Below are positions 1,015 to 62,136 of a DNA stretch of 64,000 nt, one piece after another; the first letter of the stretch is position 1, and the number at the start of each line of letters is the position of its first letter. The notes under the pieces were generated by a model, which was not told where the DNA came from, did not search any database, and saw nothing but the letters and a program-made list of their open reading frames with translations. Source of the DNA: Podarcis filfolensis (taxonomy: Eukaryota); assembly GCA_964270895.1 (NCBI GenBank), contig OZ185436.1; one strand, given 5' to 3'. A program made the position numbers and the translations under genes.

Positions 1015-22941
<21,927 letters not shown>

Positions 22942-26793: not shown

Positions 26794-29700
26794 ATGCCGG
26801 AGCTGGAGACGGTGTTGGGGAAGCGGGAGCTCTTTTTCGTGAGTAGGGCCCGGTGGGAAGGTGTCGGGGGGTGAAATGCTCGGACGGGTCCTCCCTAGGC
26901 CGAGCTCCCTTTCGCCCACAGAACTTAATTCTCCCCCCCCCCCGCGCCGGTGAAATAAAAGGCGAGGCTTGCTTCGAACATGTGCAGAGTTCTTTCCCCT
27001 CAAGATTGAACCAAGTCAAGGAAAAGCGATGTAATCATTCTAATAGGGAGTCGCTGGGTGATAGCCTTGCACAATAATTCTACTTTGCATTCGTGCAGCG
27101 AATTTTAAGTGTTCAAAATGTCCCGTGTACCGTATGGTATTTCATGGCCAGGGCAAGTGTTGTTACAATAGAACCGCTGTCTCTTTGTGCCCTTTGACTC
27201 AATCCTTCTTGTAACATTTAATACCAAAAAATATTTTGATATGACATCATCATACTGCTTCTGCTAGCCTATGATGTTAAAGTGGGGTGCTTATTATGAT
27301 GTCACTATGTTATTTTAAGTAGACATTTAAAAAGGAAGAGGCTTAGAGTGACAGCTGTTGTATGATTCTTTGTAACAGCCTTTCTCAACCTTGGGCTCCC
27401 AGATGTCATTGGACTACAATTCCTGTCATTTCTCGCTAGCAGGACCAGTGGTCAGGGATGATGGGACTTGTGGTTCAGCAGTATTGGGGACCCAGGATTG
27501 AGAAATGCTGCTCTGTAATATCTGCTTTGGTCGTTACTAACTTACAGTAGTCCTGTAAGGTAAGATTGTACACTCACACCTCAATATTTGAGCTTAGAGC
27601 TGGGACCAGAGACTTGCTAAAGATTACTTAGTGAATTTGTGGCTGCAGTAAAATATGAAGTGATGATTTTTTGGTTCATTTTTCATATGCTCACATGTAA
27701 AATTAGGTAGCATTTTTCAAAAGCCTGAAGATAGCATTGGGGTGCGTAAGTTATAACGGTGCTGCACAAAGAAATATAATAGTACATCCTCTCTCTAAAT
27801 TTATATTGCCTTGCTCCTCACCCCTACACAGGAAGAGGAAGACTTGCAATATGAAGAAGAAATATTGCGCAACCCCTTCTCTGTCAAGTGCTGGATCCGC
27901 TACATTGAGTTCAAGCAAAATGCTCCCAAGCATATCTTGAATCTGATCTATGAGAGAGCTCTTAAGGAATTGCCAGGCAGGTATGCGCTTGTGTCTCTTT
28001 CTTTTATGTAAAGTTCTTTAGCAAACTGCATGAAGGTAGTAGGGGAACCCTTTTCAATCCAGATTTTCATAAGGCATTGTTGTATAAAAAATGTAAATGA
28101 AAGGCTAACTCTTAACTTCTTCAGAATTGAGGGGAGTTTCTTATGATCTGTTTTCTGGTCTCTTCTGAAAGCAGACAGGAATACCCTCAACAGATGGAAC
28201 CCCTTGCTGTCCCTGTTGATGTTTCCCTGGTTTATTTCAGGAGCAAGGCACTATGATCACCCAACTCCCCTCGTAATGAGAGCTGGGAGCAACATGGCAA
28301 AATCTTTTACTTTAATGTTAATAGTTGCCCCCTTTGTGTTTTGCAGCTACAAGCTATGGTATAATTATCTTAAGCAGCGACGGAAGCAGGTAAAGAGCAA
28401 GTGTGTAACGGATCCCAGCTATGAAGAAGTGAACAACTGTCATGAGCGTGCCCTTGTCTTCATGCACAAGGTACAGTGGTTGGTGATATGCTTAGAGGGC
28501 TGGTAATGCCTGGGAAAAGTGAGTCAATCATAATGGCTGCTATTATGGCTGGTTATGACGATGTCTATCTGAAGGCCTCACATATGTTTTCATTTCAGAG
28601 CTGTATCTCAGATGTGTGCATATGTGGAATGCAATAATGGCTTTAGTATACCACTTTCAGCTCTCTTAAAAACAACAATCTTTAGCCTAAATCTGTGAGT
28701 TTGTCTCAGAAACTGTTGTAGATGCCACATAGCAATGGGAAGGAAATGATAAAAATAACGGGGGAGCTCCTTCCTTAAGAAGAAAGCCTTAATGAAAATC
28801 ACTGAAGGGTTTGTAAACTGATGAGCCATTCTGTAGAGAATTTTTTATTCAAAACACTAGCACTTGAGTCTCCTAGTGAAATTAGAGATGTGTATAAGAT
28901 GCCCCCAAATTTTGGACATTATTTTTTAGGGGGGAAACCTAGTCTTATACACAGAAAAATATGTTAATTGATTGCAATAGTCAAAACAAAAAAATTTTTT
29001 TCCTTCCAGTAGCACCTTAAAGACCAACTAAGTTAGTTCTTGGTATGAGCTTTCGTGTGCATGCACACTTCTTCAGATACAGAAGAAGTGTATCTGAAGA
29101 AGTGTGCATGCACACGAAAGCTCATACCAAGAACTAACTTAGTTGGTCTTTAAGGTGCTACTGGAAGGAAAAAAATTTTTTTGTTTTGACTATGGCAGAC
29201 CAACACGGCTACCTATCTGTAACTGATTGCAATAGGTTTAGGATAAGCAAAAAGCAAACACACAAAATTTGTTGGACACTGTTTCGGACTACTGAATGCT
29301 GGTTATGTCCGGGAAATTCCAGACGCATGGCAACCCTAGTATTACAAAGTGTGGAGTTTGCAAGTACCGGTAAGTTCATTGGCTTTTTGAATAAAGAAAT
29401 AGATAAATTAGTGGAGTCCATTAAGCAGAATTTCTTAAAATGGAACAGCTGTATTCAGAGGCAGTGACTTGCTTGACTGCTGCATGCTAGATGCAAGCCA
29501 CTGTTGTTGTCATAGCCCACTTGCGAACTTCCTAGTCACATATGTGTAGCCACTATTAGAAGCTGGCTGTGGGACAGTGTTAACCTTTGGTCAGATCCCC
29601 AAAGGGAGTTGCTATTTTCTTATTATTTGTCTGATTGTAGATGCCTCGGATATGGCTAGATTACTGCCAGTTTCTTATGGACCAGTGTCGGATCACCCGC

Positions 29701-32700
29701 ACCCGTAGGACCTTTGACCGAGCACTCCGGGCCCTGCCCATCACACAGCACCATCGTATCTGGCCACTCTACCTGAAGTTTGTGCGCCTGTATCCATTAC
29801 CCGAGACAGCTGTGCGGGTCTACCGCAGGTACCTGAAGGTAAGGGAACCCATATGTCCCCAACTAATTTGTCTTACCAAACTCTTCCACCTCTGAGCCAT
29901 CTGCGTAATCTTTGTAGAGAAAGTGTTGTCTTCCTTGTGCAATGACTGCCTAAATGGGTTTCTTCTCTTTTAGGCTCCTTTTCATTATTAGCACTGAATG
30001 AATTCTTGTCCTACTTTTAGTCTCGTGCATAGCCCTTGCAAAACTTCTACTGGAATATTATACTGTATTTGAGTTGGGTACTCATAGTGTTTGGAAGTGG
30101 CTAGAGAGGGTACAGAGAGATCAGAAGGCTGTGGAACAAATTCTTCAATAGCACCAAAATATTTGATTGATTTCATTTATGACAGAGAACAATAAAATTG
30201 CTTTTTCAGCAAAGAGAAATCCCTTCTCAAAGGGAGAGTATTGGACAAAAGTGTTATTTAATTGGGTACCTCTCTAGATTAGATCAGGGAGATTTTCCAG
30301 AAATACTAATGCACCGAGGGCCTTCTCGGTAGTGGCGCCCACCCTGTGGAACACCCTCCCTTCAGATGTGAAGGAAATAAGCAGCTATTGTATCTTTAAA
30401 AGACATCTGAAGGCAGCCCTGTTTAGGGAAGTTTTTAATATTTAATGCTGTATTGTTTTTTACACTTGATTGGGAGCCGCCCAGAATATTCTTATTCATT
30501 ATGTTAACTCAAGAACTGTCCTTCTGCTGGGAGTTGAGATGCAGAAACTTGTTGTAAATTACATCAGTGGCGCCCAGTAATTTTCTTTTTTCTGTTATTT
30601 TTAAAGAAACCGAGACACCAGATGCAAAGGAAGCCACAATCCCTTAACCTTCCGTAGTTTCGCAGAACAGGAAATTTCAGCAGGGACATGTTTTTTGCAG
30701 CCCTACATGACAAATTCCAACTTTTACAACTCCCTCTTATATACATCTGGTAAAGATGCAAGGTGCTTGTACTTTTTTTGCACCTGAACACCCTACAGCG
30801 AGGATAAATGAACATATGCCAACTCTTAAGTCGATCCTGCATTGCAGATGGACTTAAAGAGGGGTTCTGGGTCTGAAACCCTTTGCTTAGGACTCCTGAA
30901 CTAGGACACCTCTTTACAAAATGTTGTCTGCTCTAAATCTGTGGATAGTAGTCTGTTTAATCTGCTGTTTTTTATTTTAATTTTGGAATAAGTGAAAATT
31001 TTGTCATGTTGCCTAAAAGAAATCACACTTGTTCCCCCTGACAAATCTTAAATAGCTATAACACACTATGCACAAAGGGTTGTAAGCTACTCCTTGTATT
31101 CTTAGCTAACCTTGAGTTGGCACTTCTAGCAGTGCTGCAATTAATCTACATTAGCTCTTCTACTGCCACTGTTTTGGTCTTGTCAGCATTCTGGTGGATT
31201 CTGAGCTGTACGCGTTTTTATGTTGCAGCTGAGCCCGGAGAATGCTGAGGAATATATTGAGTACCTGCGCTCCATTGACCGCCTGGATGAGGCTGCTGTC
31301 CGCCTTGCCGCTGTGGTGAATGATGAACGCTTCATCTCCAAGGAGGGGAAATCCAACTATCAAGTGAGGCTCATGGTAGCTGGCAGTCAGCCCTCCAAAA
31401 TTATGTGGAGGATCTCTCTTCTCCTTCATCCAAAGATGCCTGCTGCAGAACAACCTGTACACTTGATGCTTTTCCTGCCTCTCAGCGTTGCCAAGATCTC
31501 TCTGACACCTTGTCCTCTCCGTTACAGCTGTGGCACGAGCTCTGTGACCTCATCTCGCAGAATCCGGACAAGGTGAAGTCGCTCAATGTGGGGGCCATAA
31601 TCCGGGGCGGCCTGACTCGCTTCACCGACCAGCTGGGCAAGCTGTGGTGTTCCTTGGCAGACTACTACATCCGCAGTGGGCATTTTGAGAAGGTAGTCAC
31701 CTGGGCCTGAGGGTTTGTGCTGTGATGCAGGGACTTGGCTGGAGTCATATCCCAATCCCAGGGGGAACTTCAAAATGGCACAGAGTGTAACGTTCAAGTC
31801 TTTCAGCTATTTCCTCTTAAATTCCTTATTCATCTGGTCTGAGCAAGACCTCACCTTTATTTGGTGAAAATCTTGGGTTGGAGACAGACATTAATTTTTA
31901 TGAAGGGCTGAAGACAGTTTGAACAAAAGTCTGCTAGTAATGGTAAATACGTGCCACCCTCATGTACCCCTACTAAGCAGACTTTATAGGTGTTTCTATT
32001 GTTCTGAAAACCTTTTTCACCAGAAGGGAAGCCTCTTTTAGATCACTTTGAACTCACTTAAAAAGAGCTATTGTCTGTCTCCACTCTTCTCCTAATTCAC
32101 TCTTTTAAATAAGGCGTTTACTGAGCTTGTAGGGATCAGATAAGGAACAGTCAGCAAAATAACCAACAGAAATCCTTACAAGCCACCAAACAAAAATGGA
32201 AATAGAAGAATCTGGAAGATTGGCAGTAGAGGAAAGTTACCTAGCATAGAGGAGGGACAAAGGATAGGGGGAAGTATCTCCTATGATTTTCTTCTTTTAT
32301 TATATTATTTCTGTTCTGTTCTCTCCCCATCAGAAGAATTCATAGTGTCTCATAATACATGAAGTGTTCCAAGTTTGTGAAAAGTCACTAGGGAAAACAA
32401 ATAAGAATCCTAGTGCTTTCTGGGGTGACTGTACATAACAAGCAGGATTTTCATGTCTTAATGTCATGCCGAGTAGATTTTTAGAAATCATTGTTTGTTT
32501 GCTTTTTTTAATTGGTACCGAGGTCAGCAAACCGGTGAAAAAAATGTGATGTATGGACAGCTGGAGGAGACTGAGAATTAGTACTCAATAACGTGTTTCC
32601 TCCTTTGGGACATCTGAACAAGCCCTCAGTTGTTCAGGTTTAAACTTCTGGGTGATCCTGTAACTTGATTCCTCCTCAAATTAGAATCAAAGGCAAAGGC

Positions 32701-41700: not shown

Positions 41701-42577
41701 GGGTAGAGGGAGGAGTGTAGCAATGGTGTGACTTATGTTTTAACCTCCATTGGCCCCTTCACTATGCATTTTTGTTCTGTTTTGCCTTGATGGTTGTTAC
41801 AGTGAAGCCTAATGCATTTATGATCATGCGGATAGTGAAGCTGTAGAGTTGAGTCAACACTGCAGGTTCTAATAGTTGGTGTAGCTTATCTAGTGGCTTT
41901 CAGTTGCAGCTTGCAGTGGAGAAGAGACATGTGAACCTGTAAAGCCAGCTTGATCTTCTCAGGATGGACCTGTTTCCTGCAGTATAGGCATGGGGCAGTC
42001 ACTGTGTGAATAATACTGTGCTGGCTCCTGTACGATTCACCAGTTTCTTGTTCCTTATTTCTAGGAGTGATGCTTCCCGCAGTGAGCTGGCTGAACTCTC
42101 CAAACAGGCTAATCCTGATGAGATAGACATTGATTTGGATGATGGAGATGAGAGTGAGGATAATGAGCCTGACGGTAAGTAAGAGACGGTGCTGTATGGT
42201 CTAGTTTTTGAAGCGAATAGGCACAAAGTAGACTAGGGTTTAGCAGTAGATCTCTAGATGATTTGCAACAGAGCAGCAAGTGTTTCTGATCTGCCAGGTC
42301 TCTAAAAAGTCCCCACACATGAAAAAGAGGGATTGCTGAAAATATTTTTGGCAAAACTAAGAGTATATTTTTATGTGAAAAAGAGAGTTCAGCTTAGTTC
42401 TGGCACAAATCAGAAATGGTTGCTAGAATGCTGAGGTTCAACCCAGCAAAGTCATTTCTCTAAGCCTGACATGTGACTGTTCTTGCTTGATTATCCCAAA
42501 TCTTCTCTCCTACAGAGGTGCAGCTGGAGCAGAAGAGTGTTCCTTCCGCTGTGTTTGGAGGCCTTAAGGATGATTGA
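26794..42577 (+). CDS. XAB2: XPA-binding protein 2 / pre-mRNA splicing factor SYF1 (HAT repeats), 19 exons, 852 aa
   Basis: join(26794..26838, 27832..27980, 28347..28470, 29641..29838, 31229..31363, 31528..31692, 33616..33760, 34118..34269, 34904..35023, 35431..35562, 36157..36288, 37809..37922, 38417..38579, 39171..39361, 39956..40078, 40598..40769, 40893..41019, 42065..42174, 42516..42577) = 2559 nt, all GT-AG with consistent phases. Peptides [36 protein letters not shown] and C-terminal [13 protein letters not shown] are diagnostic. AATAAA at 43005-43010. Confidence 0.98.
27376..27510. mobile_element. Short palindromic hAT MITE in XAB2 intron 1
   Basis: TIRs CAGCCTTTCTCAA and CAGCATTTCTCAA; TSD CTTTGTAA/CTCTGTAA (7 of 8); core ggactacaattcc...gatgatggga. 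Confidence 0.8.
28977..29220. mobile_element. Penelope-like element terminal remnant forming a perfect inverted repeat
   Basis: Arms 28977-29081 and 29089-29193 checked base by base as exact reverse complements (105 bp, 7-nt loop). GTAGCACCTTAAAGACCAAC and ...GACTATGGCAGACCAACACGGCTACC are typical of reptile Penelope-like ends. Confidence 0.8.
29090..29127 (+). ncRNA. Minimal type-I hammerhead ribozyme motif (mirror copy at 29043-29080 on the minus strand)
   Basis: GTAT-CTGAAGA-A-GTGTG(CATG)CACAC-GAAA-GCTC-ATAC: stem I GUAU/AUAC, core CUGANGA, stem II GUGUG/CACAC, GAAA, palindromic AGCU stem III, CUC cleavage triplet. Confidence 0.75.
30312..30485 (+). mobile_element. L2 3' fragment in XAB2 intron 4
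   Basis: gagggccttctcggtagtggcgcccaccctgtggaacaccctccc...gcagccctgtttagggaag matches the reverse complement of the 18500-18620 L2 end. Confidence 0.75.
32709..33182. mobile_element. Non-autonomous hAT (Charlie-type) DNA transposon, 474 bp
   Basis: TIRs CAGAGGCTTTCAACCT and (reverse complement) CAGTAGTTTTCAACCT; exact 8-bp TSD ATTTAGCC at 32701-32708 and 33183-33190. Confidence 0.88.
35885..36110. repeat. Interspersed MITE-like family, with related copies at ~9850-10045 and ~63830-64000
   Basis: Shared ...gcacaac.gg...cccc...ggaacaccccc/ctcagaacaggtttagagggcac..ggggaga... motifs in three places. Confidence 0.45.
40154..40227 (+). mobile_element. CR1/SINE 3' tail fragment (another at ~3050-3092)
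   Basis: gggggttggactagttgaccctcagggacccttccaactctacaattctatga. Confidence 0.7.
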
Positions 42578-45288: not shown

Positions 45289-48200
45289 CTATTTTGGTGT
45301 GCCTGGCTTCTTGGGGGTGCCTGGCTTCTTGGTCTGCCAGAGGTGTCCTTGGATGGTGAAGGCATCCACACTCATGGACATGGTCTTGCTGGGAATCTGC
45401 GTGAAGCGCTTACGGTCAGAGCTGTACTTGTAGATGCCCTCGATCATGGCCAGAGTGATGGTGCGTGGCCCGTAGCCTGCCAGGCGCGTCAGTTCCTCCG
45501 TCTCTGGCGACAGGGTGTACAGCGCCCGGAACTGGCAGCTCGAATCACGGAACAGGATGAGGAAGTGATTGGCTTTGCTCTTCTCCACTTCCTAAAATGG
45601 AGGGGGGGGCAGGGAGGAAGATGCGTGTAAAACAGGAGTAAGAATCAAGTCAAGACACATAAAACATTCCAACATTAGAAATGTCTGCAGAACCAACAAC
45701 AAACACGTACAGTTCTAAGTTCTTGTGAGCCAGCAGCTGTCACACATGATTTTCTTCATCTCCACTGAGAAAAGGGAGACTTCTTCAGAGGGTAGGGGGC
45801 TCTCCTACCTTCTGACAGTACGGTTCAACCGCCACTAGGCTCACAGCCAATGAAGATGACCAAACACCTTTGCACATGGGGTTCTATGATTAACATCTCT
45901 CAGTGGTGCAGCCAGTGTGATGCTTTTATGCCACTATTTTCTAACAGCGGAAGATGAGGCCTTGCTGTATTAAGCAAAGGCAAACGTCTATAGCTACAAA
46001 GCCCATGCAGAGTCAGGAGCTGGAGCCAACATGATGTTCTTCAAAATTCACAGAGATCAGAGGAGGATATCTACATGATGTGCACAGTTCAGCAAGACAA
46101 GGGCGAAGGATGCACCTTGCCCAGCCCACAGCCATTTAACAACCTGCCATCCCACCCCATGTTATTGCCTCCTCAGCTTACCTCTAGGATGCGATTTTTC
46201 TGGGGTTCATTGACTTTGCCAGCAAGGCAGCAGTGAGACAGTGCATTGTGAATAATGTACTTATTGGACTTGGCACTGGGCTCCTTGTACAGCTTGGGCC
46301 CTGCAGAGAGAAGAAGAGTTCAGCAGAGAAGACAGGCTCACAAGGCTCCCTAAAGAAGGCAGCCCTGGCAAGACAAGCAGAGATGCTTCACAAGGCAAAA
46401 GATCTGGAGGTCTCTTGATGCCCTTGCAGAGCAGAGCAGGCACCAGATCAAGACACTTTGCCAGTGCATTTGGAGAAGGAGATCTAGCAGAGCCCCCTCT
46501 GTAGTGTCACAGGGGGAAAGCTGGAATTTTCTGGAAGGGAGGACTGAGACAGCAAGAGGTTTACCTGTGTACTCTGGAATGGAGGCTGGCGAGGAGGCGG
46601 TCGATGCGTTCTCCCAGTCACGCTCCCGGTTCTGGTTGGACAGCAACCGGCTGGGGGACATTGGCCCAGAAGGAGATGCAGCTCTGCAAAACAGAAGTGC
46701 TCACCCTTAACTTCTGAAAGCGCAGCACAAACCCATTTTCCTTGGGCCTACTACTAGCTAGAAGGCCAACCCAAATCCCACCCACCCTAGAGCACACTGC
46801 CAGGGTTTTTGCATCTCCCCTATACCCTCTTAATGCTTTAGAGTAACAAGTAGAAGTACTACAAACTCACCGAGAAGACCTCTTGATGGAGAGTGAGTTG
46901 CCAGGATCATTGGCCACCGTAGAAAGCGAGAGAGTCGACTGGGAATACACCTTGCTGAGCTTGGAGCCTAGGAATAGGCAAGCACATGATCAGGAGATGG
47001 GGGCAAAGTTTACATGGCCACAGCTGTCCCTTTCCTGAACCACGGTCCCTTTGCATTCTAGCGCCACCATGACACATGGCAGCTGCGTTTACAAGTTTTC
47101 CGCCGCCCTGCAGAGCGTGCCCAGCTCCTCTCCCAACTAGCCACAGCTCTTACCCAGGAGGCCTTTCACGGGGCTGCGCGCGAGGGCAGAGTCGTCACAG
47201 AAGACGGTCTTGGGCCGCCCCTTCTTGAGGGCGCGCACAGTGGTGGGCTTCTGCCGCAGCACCTTGTCCAGGTCCTCCATCAGCTTGAGCTGATGGCGCC
47301 GCTGGTATTCCAGGCGGGTGAAGTCACCGCGCCTCGGCCCCACCACTTCCTCCTCTTGCCGGGGCTGCTCCTCTGCCTGCCGCTGTCTGGAGAAGCACAG
47401 TCAAGAATACAGCCAGAGGTTAAAAGTGACTACAAGCCCAGCAGACATTTTGTAGTTACAGGAGGAAGGATTCAACATCATACTAAAGTGCACTGCAGCT
47501 CAACAAGTGGGCTGATCTCTCCAGTTTTAGGGTGTGCAGGGGGTTGGAAACCCTGGAAGAGTGAGTGAAAAGGGCCCCATTCACACAAGGCCCCACTGTG
47601 ACATGAGAGCCATTTCCACACAATGGGAAATCCCAGTGCATCAGAACCAATACAAAACAAATGAAGCAGTAGTTATAGATGTATAAAGCATTACTTGAGT
47701 GACCCATTTTTTGTAAGTGTCGGTGTAGCATGTGAACTGGAGAAACCAAATAGAGCTATTGGGGGGGGGTGGAATACTGGAAGCACAAGGCCTCCCACCA
47801 CAGCAGAAGCACCTACCATGGCCATGCCTACAAAGAGGGCCAAGAATGAGAAGGACCCTGTGGCTTCCCCCATCCCAACCTCACCTTGCCTCCTCCTCTT
47901 TCTTCTCCTTCTCCGCCTCCTGCCATTGCTTCCTGCGCTTCGCCTCCTCAGTGCGTCGCTGCTGCCTCTCTAGGAAGCTTGCGCGCTTCTGCGCCATTTC
48001 CTCCTCAGCCATCGCCTCATCCTGAACAAACGCAGCGAGTCAGTAGAGAGAAAGGGTGGGTGAGTCCTCTAAGATGCAGGGTCACTTTTCACTTTCAGGA
48101 CAGGAGTCACACAGCAGCCAGGCCTGTCCTTATGGTTGGCTACAATGACAACTGGATGCTGAACTATATTGGTCGGATCCAGCAGAGCTCTTAGGTTCTT

Positions 48201-51200
48201 TTTCTACCTTCCTCTGGACTGGAGCCAACTGCTCTCAACCCCTCTGGAAATGCCACTCCATGTATCCTGTGTGATCCTGCCAGCTATAGATAGGGCTTGC
48301 CCAAAATGGGGTTCCTAGCACCTACAGATAGGATCAGAATCCCAAAGGTGGGTGATAGAGAGAAGGAAAAAACTTCATGTGATTTACCGATGCCTGGAGG
48401 TCCCAGGATTATCAAGCCTCAGAATGAGGTCCAAAACTGGCAGAAAGCTCAGGAACTGAGACCTCGAACTCCCACTGCAAATCCCAAGTCAACCTGGCAG
48501 AGGTCATTCTGTACATGATCCACACTCCATCCTCTCTTCATTTGAGGCTGAGTTCTGCTTCTGGAGCTTATGCTTATGGTCCTATCTTTGGGCCAGTCCA
48601 AGATGCTGCAGAGATCTGCATCGCCACTAGAGAGCAGCAGCAGCTGGTGTGATTTAAGCCGGCGCAGTAGAAAAACACGTCTGAAAAAAGATCTTCCCTG
48701 ACCCACAAGGATCTCAGAAAGGAGATGTCCGTTTTAAGTTGGACACACGCACACAGTGTCTTTGTTCAAGCACTTGGCTTCAGCAACCCCACCTGCACTT
48801 TCTGCATACGCTCCTGCCAGTCAAAAGGGGCCCCTTGGAATCCCTGTCCCACTGCAGGCCGCCTACTCCCGTTACCTTGAGCCAGCCAAGAAAGAGCGAA
48901 GCAGCACAGCCACCTGAAGCCCAGCCTAGCCCTGGCTGGCTCCAAGGGCCTAGCCATACCCAGCTCCCTCTTGCCCATGCTCCAAAAGCTCTTCTATAGA
49001 AAGTGCAGAATGCCCGCCATGAGTGTTAGCAGTCTCCGCTTCAAGCGCTTACCTTGAAGTAGAAGCCCATGCCAGCCCGGGCTGGCTCGGAGTCCAGGGC
49101 CTCGGTGATGGATCCCTCCAGCGAGTCGTTGCCATCTGCATCGTCATCTTCCTCCTCCCCCTTCAGGCTGGACAAGGGGATTTCAATCAGGCTGCTGCGC
49201 CGGTCGCTGGGCGAGGAGACGTCACTGGTGCCATCCCCCGAGACACGGCCATTGCCTCCCTGAGGGGGCACTGAGGCCACAGGCCGCAAGTTCCCCTGGG
49301 CCTCCGGGACAGGCAGCTCCTCGTCCTCGGCAAAATGGATGGAGGAGCGGGTCTGCATGGGCACCTGGCTGGGGGAAAACTTGCGGAGGTGTGGGAGGGT
49401 GTCCACGTTGTGGGGAGGTGTCAGGACCCGCGTGAGGGGGGGCAGCTTCAGCTCCACTGGCCGGGCGTGCCGGGGGCTCTTGGGCGGAGCCGGGACAGGA
49501 GACTTCTTAGGGGTGGGCTGAGGGGAGCGGGACTTGCGGGAAGGGGAGGGCGACGGCGATGGGGAGGACAGCTCCAGGGAGGAGCGGGGAGGAGCCCCCT
49601 CACGGCCGGTCCTTGGGGCTGGGATCACCCAGGCCTGCACACTAGGCTTCTTATCCAGCAGGAGGCGCTGCTGCTGATCGCTCAGACGCTGCATGTCCAG
49701 CTGCAGGGAGCTCAGGGCGGTATTCAGTTTGGCCACCGCCCGGTTGTAGTCGCCCAGGTTCTCGTCCAACGCTCCGCCCTTAGTGATTTCCGGGGAAAAG
49801 GTCACCTGCTTGTTGTCTAGGCGGGCCCGAGGGCTTCCGGCCTCTTCCTCTGCCTCCAGCTGGGCAAGCCGCTCCTCGAGAGCGAGCCGGCCATCCTCCG
49901 ACTGGCCCTGGGCGTCGGGGGCCTTCTGTAGCTGCAGGAAGGCACTCTTGCCCAGGCGCTGGCGGTGCCGGGTGAAGATGGCCTCAATGCGCTTCTTCTG
50001 AGCCTCAATGGCCCGGCGCTTCTCCTCCAGCCGCGCCCCCAGCTGGCTCATCTCTGAGCTGAGGGCGGGGCTCTGGGCGGGGCTCTCGTCTGGTGGGACA
50101 GGCCCAACCTCAGAGCCCTCAGAGCTGATCCCACTGGACTTGCTGTCTGTCGCCGCCAGCTTCTTCTTGCGCTCCGCGAAGCTGGTCATGCGCACACCAG
50201 AGGCAGACGAAGCTGTGCTATCGGGCTGCGAGCTCAGCGAACTGACGCACGAGGTGGAGTCGTCTGGGCCGCCAGGGGCCCGCGTGGGCTCCTCTGCGTC
50301 TGAGTCTAGGCTGCCGTCCTGGGCTGGCTCGGCCCCATTGGGGGGGCCATTGTGGCAGCGGTAAACAGTAGCCATGGGTGCCTTTTCTGGCACAGAAGTT
50401 TTCGGTGGCTCCGGAGAGTGCAGGTAAAAGCCATCGGGCGCTCCCTCGGGGAGCAGGCGTTCACTGCTGTGGATGATCTGCAGGGCCTCCTCGATGGTAG
50501 GCAGGTCGGGGTAGCCGTCGCTCAGCCCGTTTTCCAGGGCCAGCCCCTCCTGGGCCTTGGGTCCAGCCCCATGGAGCGGTGTTGTCACTAAGCCATTGGG
50601 GGCCTCAACCACGTCAGTGGACCGTGGGCGCGGGGAGCGAGGCAAGGAGGAATAGAGGGCAGGGGCCAGGCTGTCTGAGCTGACAGAGCGCAGCATGCCC
50701 ACCGGGTTCCCCATCACAATGTCCACATCGCTGTCCAAGCCAAAGGGGATGCTGAAGGAGACCGCCTGCGACAATGGGTGGCTAGGGAAGCGGAGCAAAG
50801 CGATAAGATTAGGAGCAAAAGAAGGACGGACAAGCTAGGACATTCCAAGCCCACCTTCCACTCACAACCTGCTGGTACTGCTTCTCACAACTCTGTATCC
50901 TAAGTCGGTGGATAAGCAGAGGTCTGGGAAATTGTCCCCTCCTCTGGCCATATGAAATCCACCCCCCGTGCTCCTCACCTGAGCTGCTTCTTGCTCCATG
51001 GTTTACCAAAACCCTCAACATGGGACATGGATGTGGAGTGATGCAGGGAGCCTAAGGACACAAAAAGGACCCAAATCAGAGAAACAAGAGAGCCGAGGAA
51101 CAAGAAGATACAGCGGGGTTGTCCTAGAGACTTGGTGGCAGGAGTCAAGGCCCTCAACTCAAGGGGTGGGAGGAATTCAAGCAGCTTGCCAGATGTTTCC

Positions 51201-54200
51201 GACTCCAGCTCCCATCCCTCCCTGACCATTGTCCATGCTTGCTCTGGCTGATGGGAGTGACAACCCAAAACATCTGGAGGGTTCCAAGTTGGCCCAGGCT
51301 GTCCTTGGGGGATAGTATCCTCCATGTCAAAATAAGGAGAAGCAAGCACACAAAAGGAGAGCCGCTCTACTTTGACAAGGATCCTTCACAAAGCATGTGT
51401 TTGAAAGGACACCAAAGGCCCATGAGGGCACGACGTCATCAGCACAAACTCCGATGACGTCAGATATATCTCAGGCTGTCTAGGGCCATCTCTTGAGGTG
51501 AGATGTAGATTAAAACCTGCCTTCTCAGAATGATCTTTTCCCATGATAGGACAGTTTACACAGTACAATTTTGTGCATGCCTATTCACAAGCAAAGTTCC
51601 AGGTGTAAACCAGGAAGGAGGAACCTGCAGCCCTCCAGACATAACTGGACTACAACTCCCATCGTCCTTGGCCTTGGGCTATGCCAGCTGGGCCGGATGG
51701 AAGTTAGGAGATTCAAAGCACCCAGAAGGGCAGAGCTTTCCCCTCTCTGGCTGCACAGGGTTGCAGCCCTTATTGCCTTACAAGAGGTTCAACAGAGCTC
51801 ACCCTTACTCATGCAATGAATCTAGCATACTGCGCCTTTACCAAAGCATCTTAAAATTGTGCCATCTAAGGCAGGCATACTATGGCTCTGTTGCTCTTGA
51901 GAAATGTGCAGCAGCTGCTGGGTGAAGCTGAACAGCTATCCAGGACCAAGAGCTTGGGAAACCACAGAAACAAGCCCCTGGGGATGCCGACAGTCATGAT
52001 CATGACGCCTTAAGAAGGACCTCCAAGAGACTTACATGTGTTTTGCTTAACCTTTTACCCCCAACAGAACTGAAGGACTCCTTTTCTTCCCCCACAGCTT
52101 GTATGCGGTTTGTATTGGTGGGGGGTGGGAGAGACTAGACAAAGCAGCAGCACCTTACCTAAAGAACCACAGAGCGGAGACTGTGCCTGCCCTCCAGGTA
52201 GCAGTGGGTGGCGGAAGCTGAAAACTGGGGAGCTACTGGGGGAGATAAGAGATGAGATCAGATTAAGAACATTGCTACAAAACTTGTTGTCACACAGAGA
52301 GAAGCAGATGCTGCTGCACACTGGTTAGGCCTCCAGCCACAATCCTCTGGCAGCACCAACACAGACCGCACTCACACAAGCGAAGTCAGCAGAGGGAAAC
52401 TGGGTGCTGAAAGCTAGTCCTTTGAGGAAATAGGATTAGTTTGGTGTGGGTTGTTGCGTTTTGTTTTTTTAAAGGGGAGGGGTGCTAGAAACCCAAGAAG
52501 GAATTTGCACAACACTAGAATCACTGCATTACATTATACGTGGAACATGTAGGCACTCTGCTAAGTGTTGATTCCACTCATTCGTTTGGCAAATGAAGTG
52601 AACAGACTTGCAGGAACAAGTTCCTTTAATTTGCTGCCTAAAGGCATTCCCATAACTTGCACATGGGAGGAAAGCTGTGCCTACCTTAAAGATCAGAAGC
52701 TTGCCCAGTCACACCCCCACCCACCCACCTGCCCTGCAAGAAGAACTACAATTTCTGCTGGCCTGGAGCAAAGGGAGAGCAGCTGCTCTGGCCAAAAGTG
52801 CTTTCCCCTTTACTCCACCAGTGCAACTCAATCCAGGTAAACCACGAAGACTCCCCTGATCAGCTGCTACAGCTGATCAGGGGAAGGGAGCACCCGACCC
52901 ACACACTGACAGTGCCAGGGACACAGTTTTCTCCCCAGAGCAAAGGAAGGCCCAAGCCTCCTGAAACATAAGGAGGCACTGAGCCACCACAAAAAACATA
53001 AGGAGCTCTCCCCACCCTGATTACAGGAATAACTCCTTCCAGATCACGTTTCCCCAAAGACTGTCTAATATTAATATGTGGAGAGGCCCCCTAGGCAAGC
53101 AGAGAGGGGGAAAGTCAAGCTGTGGCACTTCGGAGTACAGTACTAACACATCTGAAGAGCAAGTTGCTGAGTGGAGGGTTTTTTTAAGGAAAGCAAGGAC
53201 TCTTATGTCAACAGCACTGAAATCATGAAGGACCTCAAGGACTCTCCCAGACCTCTGCCAGCTGCAACAGCAACATTGCCCCTTTGAAGTGACAATAGTT
53301 AACTATTCCTAAAGGGATTCACGGTTTTTGAGCACTACTGGGAAGGGCACAGTTAAGCCACCAGCAGCGTACAACTCCCATCATTCCTGACCAGCAGCCA
53401 CATTGGTTGTTGCTGGTTGGAGTCCAGCAACATTTTGAGAGCCACTGGCTCCTTGCCTGGAGTCATCTGTCAGCAACATCATGGCTTGTGGACTTGCAGG
53501 TAGCAGTCTGGACATGACTCCCGTCTAAGGCTTCCCAACAGCTTTGATTCATACACGGGAGACTGGCTAGCCACGCTGCCAGACAGGGAAGCTAGTGATA
53601 GCAACACACTCAGGCTAAAGCAGCTTCGTTTTATAAGCTGGAACTGGAGCTGACATGGCAGAATGCAGGGACCGTCCTCTTGGTGGGTGGAAAGGTAGGG
53701 AACTGGTGCCCTGGAGAAGGCAATCCCTGGCATCTCTAGGTAGGGCTGGGAGAGGCTCCCTGTCTGAAACTACAGCTCCCATCATTCCTGACCAGATTCT
53801 GATAGCTAGGGATGATGGGAGTTGTAGTCTGAAAACGGCTGGAGACCCAAGTTTGGGAAACCCTGGTGTAGACAACATTGAGAGAGGTGGGTCAGTGGGG
53901 TCTGGTTCAGCATAAGGCAATTTCTCATGCTCCTACATCATCATCCATTAACAAAATCCTAGCTCTGGAATGAGGCACCAGAGAGAAAGAGCAGCCCACA
54001 GACACCTTCCTTGCAAAGCACAGCATCCAAATCTGACTCTCAGCATGGGCAAGAGAGGGCAAGCCTGGTTTCAGGCTCCAAGTGGCGGTGGTGAGAGTAG
54101 CAGAGGCTCCCTTACCTGCTGTTGTTCCCACTGTTGGGCGTCAGGGAGTCATTCAGCCCAGGGGAATCTGGAAGAGAACAGCCACTTTACTGAACAAGCT

Positions 54201-57200
54201 GAGAGGGGAAGGGAGCAGAGAGCTCACGCTGAGGATTAAGTCACTAGAAGGTCAGGAAAGGGTGGGAATGCCAACCACGTGTACCAAAGGGCAGGAGAGG
54301 AACCTGCTCCCATCTCGGCTCACACAGGAGGCCATTGTTCCAAGGCTGGAGCATGCCAGCTCCCAGCAGCCCATGCCTCTGCTCCACTTACTCAGTGGGA
54401 CAACTGATTTAGGGCGGCGGGGGAAGTGTGACAGTGATAGGCTGCTATCAAATACCTGTGTGCACAGACAGGCTTTATAGCACAGCCTTTACTTTTCCTT
54501 ATTTTTCAGGCATGCAATTTACCACCTGATGTACAGAATGCACAATGGGGATTAAAGGTATCTTTTCTTGCAGCAAGACCAGAAAAGCGTTCGCAACATC
54601 AAAATGCAAACTTTCCAGGAAGGGCCAAGGTTTTAACAAGTATTTGGAAAAGCCGTGAACGCTGGTCAAGATAAAGCCAAGGCAAGCACAATCTAAATCC
54701 TGCAACAGGATCCATTGATGCTCCACAGACAGAATATGTTTGCTCAATTAATCAGATAAAAGTGACTACAAGGTGTGAAACAAAAATACCAGTCACCTTT
54801 GGTTTATACCACGTAATATGGGAGGCATATGCTATACCCTCTTTCCATCTCCCCCTTAAAAGGAAGGGAGGACCTGATTGCCAATTATCTAGTTCAAAAC
54901 ATTGTACGAACTGTAACAGATAACTTGTGGAAGACAAATTTCCTAAGGCTTTAAGAGAAGCTTTTCATTCTCAAAAATAAGAAAAAGCAGGCGCGTGGGC
55001 CCCAGATTTGCAAAATGTCTGGAAAGCATGCAACTAGTAATAATGTCTTCAGAAACAATTAGATACAGCTGCAATTAAGATGTTCTGCGCTTCTTCCTTT
55101 CTCTCCCCATGTCGACTGTGCTCCCTCCTCTACTCTAATTATCCCACCAGCATTCCATATACTTCAAAAATCATAATTCTTGTGTTCACATGTATACAAA
55201 CAATTTTTTTTTTGCCATATATGCTACAATTATTAAATGGGGGTGGGTGTTAAGTTATTCGGGCGGGGGGGGAGGTAGTTTGGGTTTTTCTGCCTGCTCA
55301 GCACAATGGAAATTATCAGCACATAGTATACCAAATATAAGAGTCTGCCCATAATGAATGTACCGACAAATATCTTGCAATACTACATACCCAAAACAGC
55401 ACAGCTCTGCAGGCTGGGAATGGACTGCCTCACTCCTATCCTGGGTTAGTTGCTCCTCAAGCTAACTGCTACCACTAAGGTATGGAGGGTGAGGGGAACC
55501 ATACCTTAGACTCCAGCATCCTTGGCATCTTCAGGTAGGTCAGGGGGAAAGGCTCTGGACCTGAAACCCCAGAGAGGCACTAGCAGCCAGTTTACACACA
55601 ACAAGGAGCAAGCCAAAGCAGTGCGAGCCCGTGAACCTGGGCAGCTTCCTGGGTGCCACAGACATACAAGCACACCTGCCACCTTCTTACCTTGAAGTCC
55701 AGGCAGCTCCTTTGGGTGCACAAAGTCAGGCTTAAGCACCTCAAAGCACAGGAACAACTCTGCCAGGAACACCCCGACGTTTATCTGGGGATGAAGGGCA
55801 ATGAGTTAGCCAAATAGTCTCTGGAGGAAGCAGCCTTCATTCCCCTCACTTAGCCAGAGTTGGGTCCAGAAAACAAGGGGGAGGAGAGAACCTAGTCTCT
55901 GCTCCACCATCTCCATCTGCAGGTAGCACTCCTGAGAAGAACTCTTCCTGGTGCCTACAACGTCTCTCTTCTGACCCACCGCAATCCCCGCCCCCAGCAC
56001 TGCCCTGCCACCCACTGCAGAAGGGCCTCATTGTTCTTGCACGATCAGCCTCCAATTAGTGCAGCCAGAGGCCCCAGCCAAGACTCATTAGGGCCAAGGC
56101 AGGCTGGACGCTCAGACCAAACACTAATCCCCACTTGCTCCACATGAGCAGCCACACGGGGCACGGAGCAAGGCTTCCTTCTGCCATGCCAGGGCTCCTT
56201 CCAAGCAGCTCCTCGGCCCTGAAGCTCTGAGGGCTTCCCTTACTGCAGCCAGGGCAGCCATGTTTTTATCTCTAGAGGTACAGAGGGGCTGGAGGACTGC
56301 CCCACCTCCTGCCCAGTCCCAGCACTCACCCTCAGCATAGGCGGCATGTACAGCAGGTCCTCCAAGGAGAGGAAGCAGGAGCCACCCAAATAGTCCGCAG
56401 AGAAGCCCTGGATCAGCTGCAGGTTGTACAGGCTGTCTGCCACCGACATGGTCTCCTTCAGGCACACGTCTACAGGGCAAGGGAAGCACACAATAGCCAT
56501 CAGCGTGCGGGGTGCATTCGTGTGCACACACACGTGCGAGTGGAAGCAATGCACACACAGCGGCTGCAAGCTCCGAGCAGCTGCCCCATCCCTCCACCCA
56601 GGACCCAGAGCACCGACTTACCCTCGAGGCGCACAATCTGGGGGCAGTAGTAGTGGATGGTGGCAGCAATGGCGCCCCCGCTGGCCAGGTCCTTCATGCC
56701 AGTGATGGCAGGGAAGCAGGGAGTCTGCTTGGGCAGCGCCTTGTCCTTCCGATAGCGGATCTGTGCAGGGCAGAAACGCAGGAGGAAGTCAACACAGAGA
56801 CGGAAGGAGCTGGTCCCCACACAAGGGACACTTGAAAAAGCCTAAAGAATGCACCCCCGCCTCCTCTCGGTCCAGGGCCTCACACTCTAAGCTCCTCCAT
56901 CCCACCCTCAGCTTCACCACCATGCAGAAGCCCTCATGAAATTCTTCCTGGGAATACCCAGGGGGTGAAGAACCAACCAAGATTAACACCCTCTTTCCCA
57001 CCCCAAGAATATGTGTGCACAAAATATGACACCTCCCCCACCCTGCCCCAATACCAAGAGCAAAGTGCATGCTGGGAGGGAGGCAAAGGATATAAAGCGG
57101 GGGGGGGGGGGGGGCGCAAGCGAGTCCCTCGAAGGCACAAGTCCCTCTGTGTCAGCCAAGGAGGAGAAAAGCAGGAGGGAAGTGAGGAGGAAGCAGCCAG

Positions 57201-60200: not shown

Positions 60201-62088
60201 TCAGAAGGAAGCTGCACGAGGCAAGCAAACGCACCTTGGGACCGCTGTTGGAGGCCTGGGTCTGGCCGTCTGTTCCTGGAGCAGCCCGCTGAGTGCATTC
60301 CTGCTCGCTGCTTTGCTGTATCTTGTGGATGATCTGGAGGAAGGAAGCAAGGAGCATGCTGTTGTTTTTTGTTTTGCTTTTTATAAATACAGTCGTACCT
60401 TGGAAGTCTAACAGAATCCATTCCAGAAGTCCGTTCAACTTCCAAAACATTCAAAAACCAAAGCGTGGCTTCTGATTGTCTTCCTGCAGCCAGTCAGAAG
60501 CCCCGTTGGATGTTCAGCTTCCAAAAATAGTTTGCAAACCGGAACAGGCATTTCTGGGTTTGCGGCATTCGGGAACTACAATACTTTTCTTTCTATTAGA
60601 CGCCCCCATGTATAAGACCCCCCTATTTGGGGGGACTCAATTTTAAGAAAATGAGGGGAGATGGCTCAAAGTTGTTGAGCCTCTCCCCCCACGCAGCTGT
60701 GGGCAAGAAACACTCCCTAGATCATTTCCCACACACAGGTAGGAAGTGTTTCCCTCGCACAGCAGCATAGAGGGAAGGTGTGCTCCAGCCAGTCAGCCGG
60801 TTGGCCAAAGGGCACCTTCCCCTGATGCCGCTGTGTGTGCGGGAAATGATCCAGGGAGTACTTCCCATGCGCAGCAGCATCGGGGGAAGCTGCGTGTCGC
60901 CAGCCAGTGCCCCCAGATCGCTCCCTGTAGGCAGCAGCATCAGGAGAAGCTGCATGCCGCCACACAGCACTTCCAGATCGCGGCACTTCCAGCGGCATCT
61001 CCCCCCATGCCACTATCCATGTATTGGACGACCCCAGTTTTTTGACATGATTTTTGTGTCAAAAAACCTCATCCAATACATGGGAAAATACGGTAAGCTG
61101 TTCCAAAACCAAGGTATGACTTTATTTTTACTGATTTTTTTTTTCAGTACAGGATACAATAAAAGTCAAACTAATTTAAAGAAAAAAGCGTGTTGAGAAG
61201 ACACACACCTTACCAATCCCTGCACATCCCACCCACAGACCACTTTAAGGTGCTGGAGGTCCCTCCTCTCCTACTCTCCTCTCCTTCGCAAACAGGTCAT
61301 GTTATATGTGTCTCCAAAAACATGACTGCCTTCCTGAGTCCAGGCCAAAAAGAGATAAATGACTTGTGGCACCTTATTAAAGATGACAAATGTGTTACGG
61401 GGATAAACTTTCATGGATTAGAGATCCCTTTATCAGATGCATGAAGTTAATCCCCCACTGGCATGTGGGTGTAAAAAAACTTTTGTTGGAGAGGAAAGGG
61501 CAATGAAATGCAACTCCACTTGAGCTTAAATGTATGCAAAGTAAGCCCAGCGCCCCTTCACAACAGAAGCAAATTAGTGATAGACTGAAACAGGCCGGAA
61601 CAGAATCAAGGAACTGCCCCTTTTATTTAATATTTTATCCGAAGTTTCTATTAGGTCATATTCAAAACCAATGAAAAAACTATGTTTATTAACCTGCCCC
61701 TATCCTTTGGGCTCCAGGTGAGATTTTACAGCAATTTTTAGTAGGATAAATCTATGTCCCCAAAGGGCTCACAAATGTAAGTAATCCATCCAAACCATTT
61801 TACTCCAACCTCACATTTTCCATGTCAGAGGTTGGATAGTGCAGCTGGGCATGGACTAGTGCAGATGTGGAGAACCTCTGGCCCTCCAGATATTGCTAAA
61901 CTACAACCATGACTGGCCACTGGCTATCCTTGCAGGGGCTGATGGGAGTTGTATTTCATTGACCTCTAGAGGAGTAAAGGTTCCTGGAGTAGAGAATCAA
62001 ACAAACTTGCTGTGTGAATAAAGTGAGACGTTAACTCCCTCTATGCCCACCTAAGTAATCTGGAGGAAGCACAAATATCAAGAATAGC

Positions 62089-62136
<48 letters not shown>

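What the first reader, a model, noticed from the sequence alone, without database searches (positions are those of the whole stretch)
28977..29193. Perfect 105-bp palindrome in XAB2 intron 3 carrying a hammerhead ribozyme on each strand
Seen: zero mismatches over 105-bp arms with a 7-nt loop. The right arm reads GUAU-CUGAAGA-A-GUGUG(CAUG)CACAC-GAAA-GCUC-AUAC: stem I, catalytic core, stem II, GAAA and a CUC triplet (predicted cut between 29123 and 29124). An identical motif lies on the minus strand at 29043-29080. The loop region repeats gaagaagtgt (29082-29091 and 29096-29105), consistent with template switching. Established: Penelope-like retroelements carry minimal type-I hammerheads with a palindromic stem III that cleave as dimers, and an extra nucleotide between A9 and G10.1 occurs in natural hammerheads such as CChMVd. 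Inference: in XAB2 pre-mRNA, a co-transcriptional choice between the long dsRNA hairpin (ADAR/Dicer substrate, ribozyme sequestered) and the ribozyme fold could cut an essential splicing-factor transcript. The class is known, but I cannot tell whether this locus is described or active.
Basis: partly seen in the sequence, partly recalled or inferred. Interest (0 to 1): 0.82.

Follow-up and report, generated by a model that had tools for sequence, protein, structure and literature searches.

The report
Young palindromic Penelope-type retroelement insertion
The perfect palindrome and its hammerhead-ribozyme motif are real, but this is one very recent copy of a hugely abundant Penelope-type jumping element that landed head-to-head in an intron of the splicing-factor gene XAB2, and its ribozyme motif is almost certainly silent here.

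Summary
Arms 28977-29081 and 29089-29193 are 105/105 complementary around a 7-nt loop. Each strand carries one complete minimal hammerhead (HHR) motif, and the site lies in XAB2/SYF1 intron 3. The palindrome sits inside a 243-bp insertion (28981-29223) flanked by a perfect 12-bp target duplication. Only the right arm carries a 34-nt AC-rich "tail". This is the published anatomy of Penelope-like element (PLE) insertions: 5'-truncated copies, an adjacent inverted copy, and a 30-40-bp tail at one end. The HHR matches the PLE "min-HHR": a bulged base after A9, G10.1-C11.1, and a palindromic GC at 15.2/16.2. Rfam models miss it. My descriptor found it only in these two arms and never in 300 random windows. 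The family is very high-copy, with summed contig depth about 10^4 times the flanks. No indexed sequencing run holds this copy's loop or junction words, so it is probably very young or polymorphic, and it lacks independent read support. Cleavage of XAB2 pre-mRNA is unlikely. The hairpin beats the HHR fold by about 57 kcal/mol. Helix III needs a second sense copy that each strand lacks. Published min-HHR monomers are inactive. This scan has reported the same kind of palindrome at other loci of this genome. Verdict: ordinary and already known.

The parts
28981..29223 (+). The whole 243-bp retroelement insertion: two 5'-truncated copies head-to-head plus a tail.
   Evidence: It is bracketed by a perfect 12-bp direct repeat. 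Matches to the repeat family end at 29223/29224 in contigs of three DNA runs (table 7).
28969..28980 (.). Left copy of the target-site duplication, TGATTGCAATAG.
   Evidence: The repeat is 16 bp with one mismatch if TAAT/TAAC is included.
29224..29235 (.). Right copy of the target-site duplication, TGATTGCAATAG.
28981..29081 (-). Left arm: an inverted (antisense) 5'-truncated element copy without the tail. It carries the hammerhead motif on the minus strand (29080-29043, cut 29047/29046).
29082..29088 (.). The 7-nt centre GAAGAAG. Positions 29082-29091 duplicate 29096-29105 (GAAGAAGTGT). Positions 29087-88 (AG) also fit the family sequence.
   Evidence: table 7 shows loose ends 'before 29087' with a shared upstream consensus.
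29089..29189 (+). Right arm: a sense 5'-truncated element copy.
   Evidence: Its exact 31-mers are present in contigs of at least five related organisms.
29090..29127 (+). Minimal type-I hammerhead motif. Helix I is 29090-93/29124-27. The core CUGAAGA is 29094-100. The bulged A is 29101. Helix II is 29102-06/29111-15 with loop CAUG. GAAA is 29116-19. The palindromic GC is 29120-21. U16.1 and C17 are 29122-23, and the predicted cut is 29123|29124.
   Evidence: The descriptor scan hit only the two arms in 64 kb and nothing in 300 random windows. The features match the PLE min-HHR. There is no Rfam hit.
29190..29223 (+). A 34-nt AC-rich 'tail' (CTATGGCAGACCAACACGGCTACCTATCTGTAAC), present on the right arm only.
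   Evidence: PLE tails of 30-40 bp, often at one end only, are described in PMC8557442. An approximately 34-nt tail lies between the two RT start sites in PMC11167929.
28973..28980 (.). TGCAATAG, at the end of the left target copy. It is 7/8 complementary to the start of the tail (CTATGGCA, 29190-29197), giving microhomology at the left junction.
28471..29640 (+). XAB2/SYF1 intron 3, the host of the insertion. Without the insertion it would be about 927 nt.

Best explanation
This is a single, very recent integration of a short, extremely abundant Penelope-like (PLE-type) retroelement into an AT-rich site in intron 3 of XAB2. Two 5'-truncated cDNA copies of the element's 3' region were joined head-to-head in one event. 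One copy starts at the distal initiation site and so carries the 34-nt tail. The other starts at the proximal site, where the target end TGCAATAG can pair 7/8 with the start of the tail. Both copies run to the same 5' point (about 29088), and they are joined after a 6-7-nt slippage duplicate of GAAGAAG. The head-to-head form arises in one of two ways. Either both staggered nicks primed cDNA synthesis, or one cDNA snapped back and the end was joined by microhomology. The sequence cannot tell these apart. The hammerhead motif is inherited family sequence, the PLE min-HHR. In this arrangement it is masked by a perfect 105-bp duplex and lacks a partner for helix III, so it does not cleave XAB2 pre-mRNA. 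The anatomy, family abundance, motif and energetics are shown here. The integration mechanism, the inactivity and the young age are inferred.
For: A perfect 12-bp TSD brackets both arms, so they arrived in one event. The 3' end at 29223/4 is shared by dozens of family contigs with unrelated flanks in three DNA runs, while 5' ends and fold points vary, which is the retroposon pattern (tables 5 and 7). Summed contig depth is 1-3 million over 29001-29222 against 11-128 in the flanks. More than 200 other left-arm-to-right-arm joints appear in independent short-read contigs, so head-to-head copies recur in this family (table 5). The target is AT-rich: 0.67-0.77 against 0.53 for the window. The literature describes exactly this anatomy, namely 5' truncation, an adjacent inverted 5'-truncated copy and a 30-40-bp tail often at one end (PMC8557442). 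The Anolis Poseidon enzyme cuts and extends both strands, starts RT at two internal sites about 34 nt apart in an AC-rich region, and prefers AT-rich targets (PMC11167929). The motif has every min-HHR hallmark and is not chance. For masking, the hairpin is -194.5 against -137.1 kcal/mol for the hammerhead-constrained fold, and -88.6 against -45.9 when transcription reaches 29127. For youth, there are 0/105 arm mismatches, the arm 31-mers are identical to copies in at least five organisms, and the loop and junction words are missing from all 20 best runs. Right-flank contigs of X1, X3 and X9 all stop matching at 29224 with 29 unmatched letters beyond (table 8).
Against: No full-length element with an RT/GIY-YIG ORF was seen, so PLE membership rests on the motif plus the insertion anatomy. 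No reading frame is open across 29087-29223, unlike Poseidon_Ac, whose ORF starts inside stem II. Rfam hammerhead models do not score the motif. No independent reads confirm this particular copy, because only contigs were available and none bridges a junction. Inactivity is inferred from energetics and from published work on other PLE hammerheads, not measured.
Confidence: 0.85

Rival explanations
1. A functional or conditional ribozyme switch. The XAB2 pre-mRNA would sometimes fold the right-arm hammerhead instead of the hairpin and cut itself, regulating an essential splicing factor.
For: The catalytic core is intact: C3-A9, G12-A14, A15.1-U16.1, C17 and G10.1-C11.1. No family variant at 10% or more falls inside 29094-29122, while the cleavage-site position 29123 and 29129, 29131 and 29135 just downstream vary (table 3).
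Against: The hairpin is 57 kcal/mol more stable and nucleates first. Helix III cannot form in a monomer. There is only one sense motif per strand and no other copy in 64 kb. Min-HHR monomers are inactive, dimers are weak, and the Anolis PLE hammerhead needs its protein. The insertion seems absent from other individuals and species, so it cannot be a conserved regulator.
Confidence: 0.03
2. An assembly fold-back artefact. The palindrome would have been created by a chimeric long read or an assembler error at an ordinary single-arm insertion or an empty site.
For: No indexed run holds the loop-crossing or junction-crossing words. No contig bridges either junction. PLE structures are known to trouble assemblies (PMC8557442).
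Against: A perfect TSD brackets the whole structure. The arms differ by exactly a PLE-type tail. There is a 7/8 microhomology at the left junction. A fold-back chimera would not continue into correct unique sequence on both sides. Many other head-to-head joints of this family exist in independent short-read contigs (table 5).
Confidence: 0.07
3. A foldback/MITE-type DNA transposon with long terminal inverted repeats, not a retroelement.
For: It is a short element made almost entirely of inverted repeats and flanked by a direct repeat.
Against: The ends are asymmetric, with a 34-nt tail on one side only. Family contigs mostly carry a single arm, with a common 3' end at 29223/4 and variable 5' ends and fold points. 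It has a PLE-type hammerhead and an AC-rich tail.
Confidence: 0.03

Closest known systems
Penelope-like element insertions (Penelope/Poseidon/Neptune clades), as described by Evgen'ev & Arkhipova 2005, Arkhipova 2006 and Craig et al. 2021 (PMC8557442)
   Same: 5'-truncated copies, an inverted 5'-truncated copy directly adjacent that forms an inverted repeat, a 30-40-bp tail at one end only, a hammerhead motif in the terminal region, an AT-rich target, and a very high copy number in a non-mammalian vertebrate.
   Different: Only about 136 nt of element per arm is present. No RT/GIY-YIG ORF is present here, and no frame is open across the fragment, so the source may be a non-autonomous derivative. 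The clade was not determined.
Poseidon_Ac (PAc) of Anolis carolinensis, characterised in vitro (Frangieh et al. 2024, PMC11167929)
   Same: The same hammerhead architecture: CUGANGA, one bulged base, a long stem II, GAAA, a 2-nt palindrome and UC. An AC-rich RT-initiation region lies downstream of the hammerhead. The two start sites are about 34 nt apart (here 29189 and 29223). Both target strands are cut and extended. The target is AT-rich.
   Different: By eye I saw no sequence similarity outside the core, and I ran no alignment. The PAc ORF starts in stem II and its cut lies 26 nt after the ATG. Here the ATG in loop II runs into a stop after 9 codons. The distances from the cut to the two ends are 66 and 100 nt, against about 55 and 89 nt in PAc.
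Metazoan PLE minimal hammerheads, or min-HHRs (Cervera & de la Pena 2014, PMC4209133)
   Same: A short helix I (4 bp), a longer helix II (5 bp), an unpaired base between A9 and G10.1, a G10.1-C11.1 pair, a palindromic 15.2/16.2 (G-C), and no helix III hairpin, so a dimer is needed.
   Different: Here stem II plus its loop is itself a 14-nt perfect palindrome. Two sense RNAs are therefore predicted to pair through stem II rather than helix III. The palindromic insertion never places two sense motifs on one strand.
L1 twin priming (Ostertag & Kazazian 2001; cited from my own knowledge, not read here)
   Same: A second priming event from the other nicked strand yields an inverted segment within one insertion flanked by one TSD.
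   Different: In L1 the second primer anneals internally, giving an inversion of the 5' part. Here both copies start in the 3' region of the RNA, which gives a near-perfect palindrome.

Membership tests
Hammerhead ribozyme (Rfam Hammerhead_1 RF00163, Hammerhead_3 RF00008 and relatives) | A score at or above the family gathering threshold of the covariance model. | tested here: not met
   No hammerhead family is listed even at E<=10, on the whole hairpin, on one arm alone, or on the whole window at gathering thresholds. This is to be expected for motifs without a helix III hairpin.
Hammerhead ribozyme (catalytic core) | C3 U4 G5 A6 N7 G8 A9, G12 A13 A14, A15.1-U16.1, H17 that is not G, and three helices around the core. 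| tested here: inconclusive
   All core bases and helices I (4 bp) and II (5 bp) are present. Helix III is a single A-U pair closing a 2-nt GC, which cannot form in a monomer.
Hammerhead ribozyme | Self-cleavage 3' of position 17. | not testable with these tools
   Only assembled contigs were available, so no molecule ends could be read (table 6: none).
PLE minimal hammerhead (Cervera & de la Pena 2014) | An unpaired base between 9 and 10.1, a G10.1-C11.1 pair, a palindromic 15.2-16.2, a short helix I and a longer helix II. | tested here: met
   A29101; G29102-C29115; G29120/C29121; helix I 4 bp; helix II 5 bp. The criteria are quoted from PMC4209133. The chance expectation is 0 hits in 300 random 64-kb windows.
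Penelope-like element insertion | 5' truncation with a fixed 3' end, often an adjacent inverted 5'-truncated copy, and a 30-40-bp tail at one end. | tested here: met
   Both arms are truncated at about 29088. There is a 34-nt tail on the right arm only. The 3' end at 29223/4 is common to the family. The criteria come from PMC8557442.
Penelope-like element | An ORF with a telomerase-like RT and a GIY-YIG endonuclease in the full-length element. | not testable with these tools
   The window holds no other copy. An exact 30-mer scan of metagenome contigs found nothing. No eukaryote genome collection or repeat library was on hand.
Penelope-like element | An AT-rich target site (ATT preference of the PAc endonuclease). 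| tested here: met
   The target is 67-77% AT, against 53% for the window. The inferred bottom-strand nick lies at TCA|ATT. The criterion comes from PMC11167929.
Animal non-LTR retrozymes (tandem HHR repeats giving circRNAs) | Head-to-tail tandem units, each with a type-I hammerhead. | tested here: not met
   The two copies are head-to-head, not tandem. Sequence beyond the family 3' end has no consensus (agreement about 0.4, table 7).
MITE / foldback DNA transposon | Symmetric terminal inverted repeats as the element ends in most copies. | tested here: not met
   The ends are asymmetric, with a tail on one side. Most family contigs carry one arm, with variable fold points (tables 5, 7, 8).

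The most novel reading that the evidence does not exclude
The locus may be an in-vivo footprint of how Penelope-type elements make their characteristic head-to-head copies. On this reading, two cDNAs are made in one event, started at the two alternative RT initiation sites, and joined by microhomology. Family-wide, the preferred fold or switch point would be the GUGU/ACAC self-complementarity of hammerhead stem II. In other copies, joints 29054/29056 to 29088 with 3-4 shared letters recur at about 10-36 times single-copy depth. If so, the hammerhead's DNA palindrome, not its catalysis, shapes the insertion structure. The copy would also be a segregating 105-bp perfect palindrome in an essential gene's intron.
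Probability: 0.35. Interest if true: 0.4.

Novelty: already known. Interest (0 to 1): 0.14.

Why it matters
The finding matters little on its own. It is one more copy of a well-described kind of retroelement insertion, and its ribozyme motif is inherited baggage, not a regulator of XAB2. It has two minor uses. First, it is a very clean example (perfect TSD, tail on one arm only, microhomology at a junction, slippage duplicate at the centre) for testing models of how PLE integration produces inverted copies. Second, if it is truly polymorphic, a 105-bp perfect palindrome in an intron of an essential gene is a natural test case for palindrome instability and for intronic dsRNA effects such as editing and small RNAs. 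Neither was shown here.

Tried and rejected
1. Rfam. I searched 28500-29700 and the single arm 29086-29235 at E<=10, and the whole window at gathering thresholds. No hammerhead hit appeared. The many miRNA-family hits are generic long-hairpin matches far below their gathering scores.
2. Other copies in the window. blastn with word size 7 found none beyond the two arms.
3. Exact 30-mer of the core in metagenome contigs: 0 matches.
The 201-nt replacement gave a uniform ceiling of 0.68.
5. Read laying returned assembled contigs only. It therefore gave no molecule ends, no strand information, no usable editing signal and no contig bridging a junction. The RNA-guess run X15 covers the flanks but says nothing about this copy.
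6. I looked for a coding frame across the element, as in Poseidon_Ac. All three frames are closed.
7. I considered and rejected: a miRNA precursor (no family reaches threshold, and the locus does not appear conserved); a tandem retrozyme (the copies are not head-to-tail); and a MITE (asymmetric ends, and the family is mostly single-arm).
8. I did not align the element to the Poseidon_Ac consensus from the paper's supplement, to avoid typing long sequence. That comparison is by architecture only.
Full report
**Observation**

The window holds a perfect inverted repeat. Arms 28977-29081 and 29089-29193 match at 105 of 105 positions around a 7-nt centre, GAAGAAG (29082-29088). With one mismatch the repeat extends to 28973/29197, 109 nt in all. 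As RNA, the stretch folds into one hairpin of -194.5 kcal/mol, with z = -29 against shuffles.

The right arm reads GUAU-CUGAAGA-A-GUGUG(CAUG)CACAC-GAAA-GC-UC|AUAC at 29090-27, and the mirror copy lies on the minus strand at 29080-43. The 10-nt repeat GAAGAAGTGT at 29082-91 and 29096-105 is also present.

On the + strand:
- Exon 1 starts at the ATG at 26794.
- Exon 2 (27832-27980) matches human SYF1/XAB2 residues 18-65.
- Exon 3 (about 28347-28470) ends at K108.
- Exon 4 (29641-29838) matches residues 109-173.

Intron 3 is therefore 28471-29640, with standard GT/AG splice sites at the boundaries I printed.

- The palindrome sits between two copies of TGATTGCAATAG (28969-28980 and 29224-29235). 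This direct repeat is 16 bp with one mismatch if the preceding TAAT/TAAC is counted.
- The right arm continues for 34 nt (29190-29223, CTATGGCAGACCAACACGGCTACCTATCTGTAAC) that the left arm lacks.
- The inserted unit is therefore 28981-29223, 243 bp, and both arms arrived in one event.
- The last 8 nt of the left target copy (TGCAATAG) are 7/8 complementary to the first 8 nt of that tail. This is why the repeat finder extends the arms to 109 nt.

**Is the hammerhead motif real?**

Rfam does not report any hammerhead family. I searched the 1.2-kb context at E<=10, one arm alone at E<=10, and the whole window at gathering thresholds. The miRNA-family matches are generic hairpin matches below threshold.

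The Rfam miss is to be expected, because these motifs lack a helix III hairpin. Cervera and de la Pena (PMC4209133) found them with an RNAmotif descriptor, not with covariance models. They list these hallmarks for metazoan PLE min-HHRs:
- a base between A9 and G10.1;
- a G10.1-C11.1 pair;
- palindromic positions 15.2/16.2;
- a short helix I and a longer helix II.

All of these are met here: A29101, G29102-C29115, G29120/C29121, a 4-bp helix I and a 5-bp helix II. A descriptor I wrote on those rules hits only the two arms in the 64-kb window. It hit nothing in 300 first-order Markov random windows scanned on both strands. The motif is real and not a chance match, but it is a family feature, not something special to this locus.

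**The family**

I laid Logan contigs of three DNA runs (organisms A, B, C) and one possible RNA run on 28520-29620.
- Summed contig depth is about 1-3 million over 29001-29222, against 11-128 in the unique flanks. This is no copy number, but it points to the order of 10^4 copies.
- Dozens of contigs per run stop matching at 29224 and continue into unrelated sequence, so the family has a common 3' end.
- 5' ends and arm-to-arm joints vary. More than 200 different left-arm-to-right-arm joints were found.
- Head-to-head copies are therefore recurrent in independent short-read data.
- The core 29094-29122 shows no variant at 10% or more, whereas 29123 (C to U, still a permitted H17), 29129, 29131 and 29135 vary.
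- No frame is open across 29087-29223, so this part of the family is non-coding.

**Comparison with the literature**

Craig et al. (PMC8557442) describe PLE insertions as highly 5'-truncated. They often carry an inverted 5'-truncated copy immediately adjacent, which forms inverted repeats, and a 30-40-bp tail that is often present at one end only.

Frangieh et al. (PMC11167929) studied the Anolis Poseidon enzyme in vitro:
- It cuts and extends both DNA strands.
- It prefers AT-rich targets (ATT).
- It starts reverse transcription at two internal sites in an AC-rich stem-loop, and the approximately 34-nt tail is the stretch between them.
- Its hammerhead cleaves only when the element's protein is present, and it is not needed for insertion.
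- No RNA-seq reads begin or end at the cleavage site.

The present locus fits point by point. The target is AT-rich, 67-77% against 53% for the window, and the inferred bottom-strand nick lies at TCA|ATT. The tail is AC-rich and 34 nt long. The outer ends of the arms lie at the two sites, and the copies are inverted and 5'-truncated.

The Poseidon_Ac consensus has the same hammerhead architecture. By eye I saw no other sequence similarity, and I ran no alignment.

**Mechanism (inferred)**

Staggered nicks 12 bp apart were made in an AT-rich site. One cDNA was primed from the bottom strand at the distal site and so carries the tail. The inverted arm came about in one of two ways:
- The top-strand end, paired 7/8 with the start of the tail, primed a second cDNA.
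- Alternatively, the first cDNA snapped back, and its copy was joined to the target through the same microhomology.

Both copies stop at about 29088. This is also where many family copies begin (table 7), which suggests a defined 5' end of the template RNA or a strong stop to reverse transcription.

The centre GAAGAA(G) duplicates 29096-29101. This is what a 14-nt backward slip at the GUGU repeat (29088-91 / 29102-05) would produce. In other copies, the best-supported joints (29054 or 29056 to 29088, with 3-4 shared letters) are the signature of pairing between a cDNA end ...ACAC and the GTGT of stem II.

**Will it cut XAB2 pre-mRNA?**

Very unlikely, for four reasons.
- In the sense transcript only the right arm carries the motif, and its perfect complement has already been transcribed. 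When the 3' end reaches 29127 the hairpin is -88.6 kcal/mol against -45.9 for the best hammerhead-compatible fold. For the full insertion the figures are -194.5 against -137.1.
- Helix III is a single A-U pair closing 2 nt, so it needs a second sense copy to form AGCU/AGCU. The palindrome gives one sense motif per strand, and the window has no other copy.
- Two isolated arms are predicted to pair through the 14-nt palindromic stem II instead.
- Published monomeric min-HHRs show no cleavage, and dimers only weak cleavage.

The long intronic dsRNA could be a substrate for editing or dicing. That rests on general knowledge and was not tested here.

**Age and reality of this copy**

The arms show no differences. 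Their exact 31-mers occur in contigs of at least five related organisms. However, all 20 best runs hold exactly 13 of the 19 sampled words of 29056-29256. That is the share expected for arm-only words, so none holds the loop-crossing or junction-crossing words.

Runs that hold the flanks at 99% identity or better differ from the window at 28660 and 29268. Their right-flank contigs stop matching at 29224, with 29 unmatched letters beyond.

The simplest reading is that the insertion is absent from those individuals and species, which makes it very young or polymorphic. I could not prove an empty site. I also have no independent read support for this copy, so an assembly artefact keeps a small probability. 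The TSD, the tail asymmetry and the junction microhomology all argue against an artefact.

**Verdict**

This is an ordinary, already-described kind of Penelope-type insertion. Earlier notes of this scan report the same kind of palindrome at several other loci of this genome, and two follow-ups reached the same conclusion. Those notes call the genome a lizard's. I did not verify the species.

Noticed in passing
window 28890-28968: A different high-copy repeat ends right at the insertion site. Summed contig depth is about 49,000-63,000 against 32 in the flank for run X1, and many contigs diverge after 28961-28969. The Penelope-type element seems to have landed at the A/T-rich end of this older repeat.
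   Followed up: partly
window 29297-29370: Another moderately repeated stretch lies in the same intron. Summed depth is about 13,000 against 32 in X1. It was not identified.
   Followed up: no
window 29088-29090 (family-wide, from contigs of runs X1, X3, X9): Many family copies begin at 29088-29090, 4-6 nt upstream of the CUGAAGA box and not at the predicted ribozyme cut (29123/4). Both arms of this copy also end there. This suggests a defined 5' end of the template RNA or a strong stop to reverse transcription. It also argues that uncleaved RNA is what gets copied.
   Followed up: partly
window 29054/29056 joined to 29088 (joints in other genomic copies, table 5): A head-to-head junction with 3-4 shared letters recurs at about 10-36 times single-copy depth. 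It fits pairing of a cDNA end ...ACAC with the GTGT of hammerhead stem II. Earlier notes of this scan describe loopless palindromes folded on stem II at other loci.
   Followed up: partly
window 29102-29115: Stem II plus its loop (GTGTGCATGCACAC) is itself a perfect 14-nt palindrome. Two sense RNAs are predicted to form a 14-bp intermolecular duplex (-32.6 kcal/mol for the dimer, against 2 x -7.8 for monomers) rather than the helix III dimer.
   Followed up: partly
window 47884-48039 and 49044-50834, minus strand: A long open frame of 597 aa and a lysine/glutamate-rich coiled-coil-like exon lie downstream of XAB2 on the opposite strand. They may belong to a CAMSAP3-like neighbour, as in the human gene order. 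This is from memory and was not tested.
   Followed up: no
window 18578-19198, minus strand: A 207-aa open frame resembles the C-terminal part of a LINE-type reverse transcriptase. It was not tested and is unrelated to the finding.
   Followed up: no
window 41988-42179, plus strand: This is the C-terminal XAB2 exon (…[29 protein letters not shown]…), so the gene spans roughly 26.8-42.2 kb of the window. It was identified by eye only.
   Followed up: no
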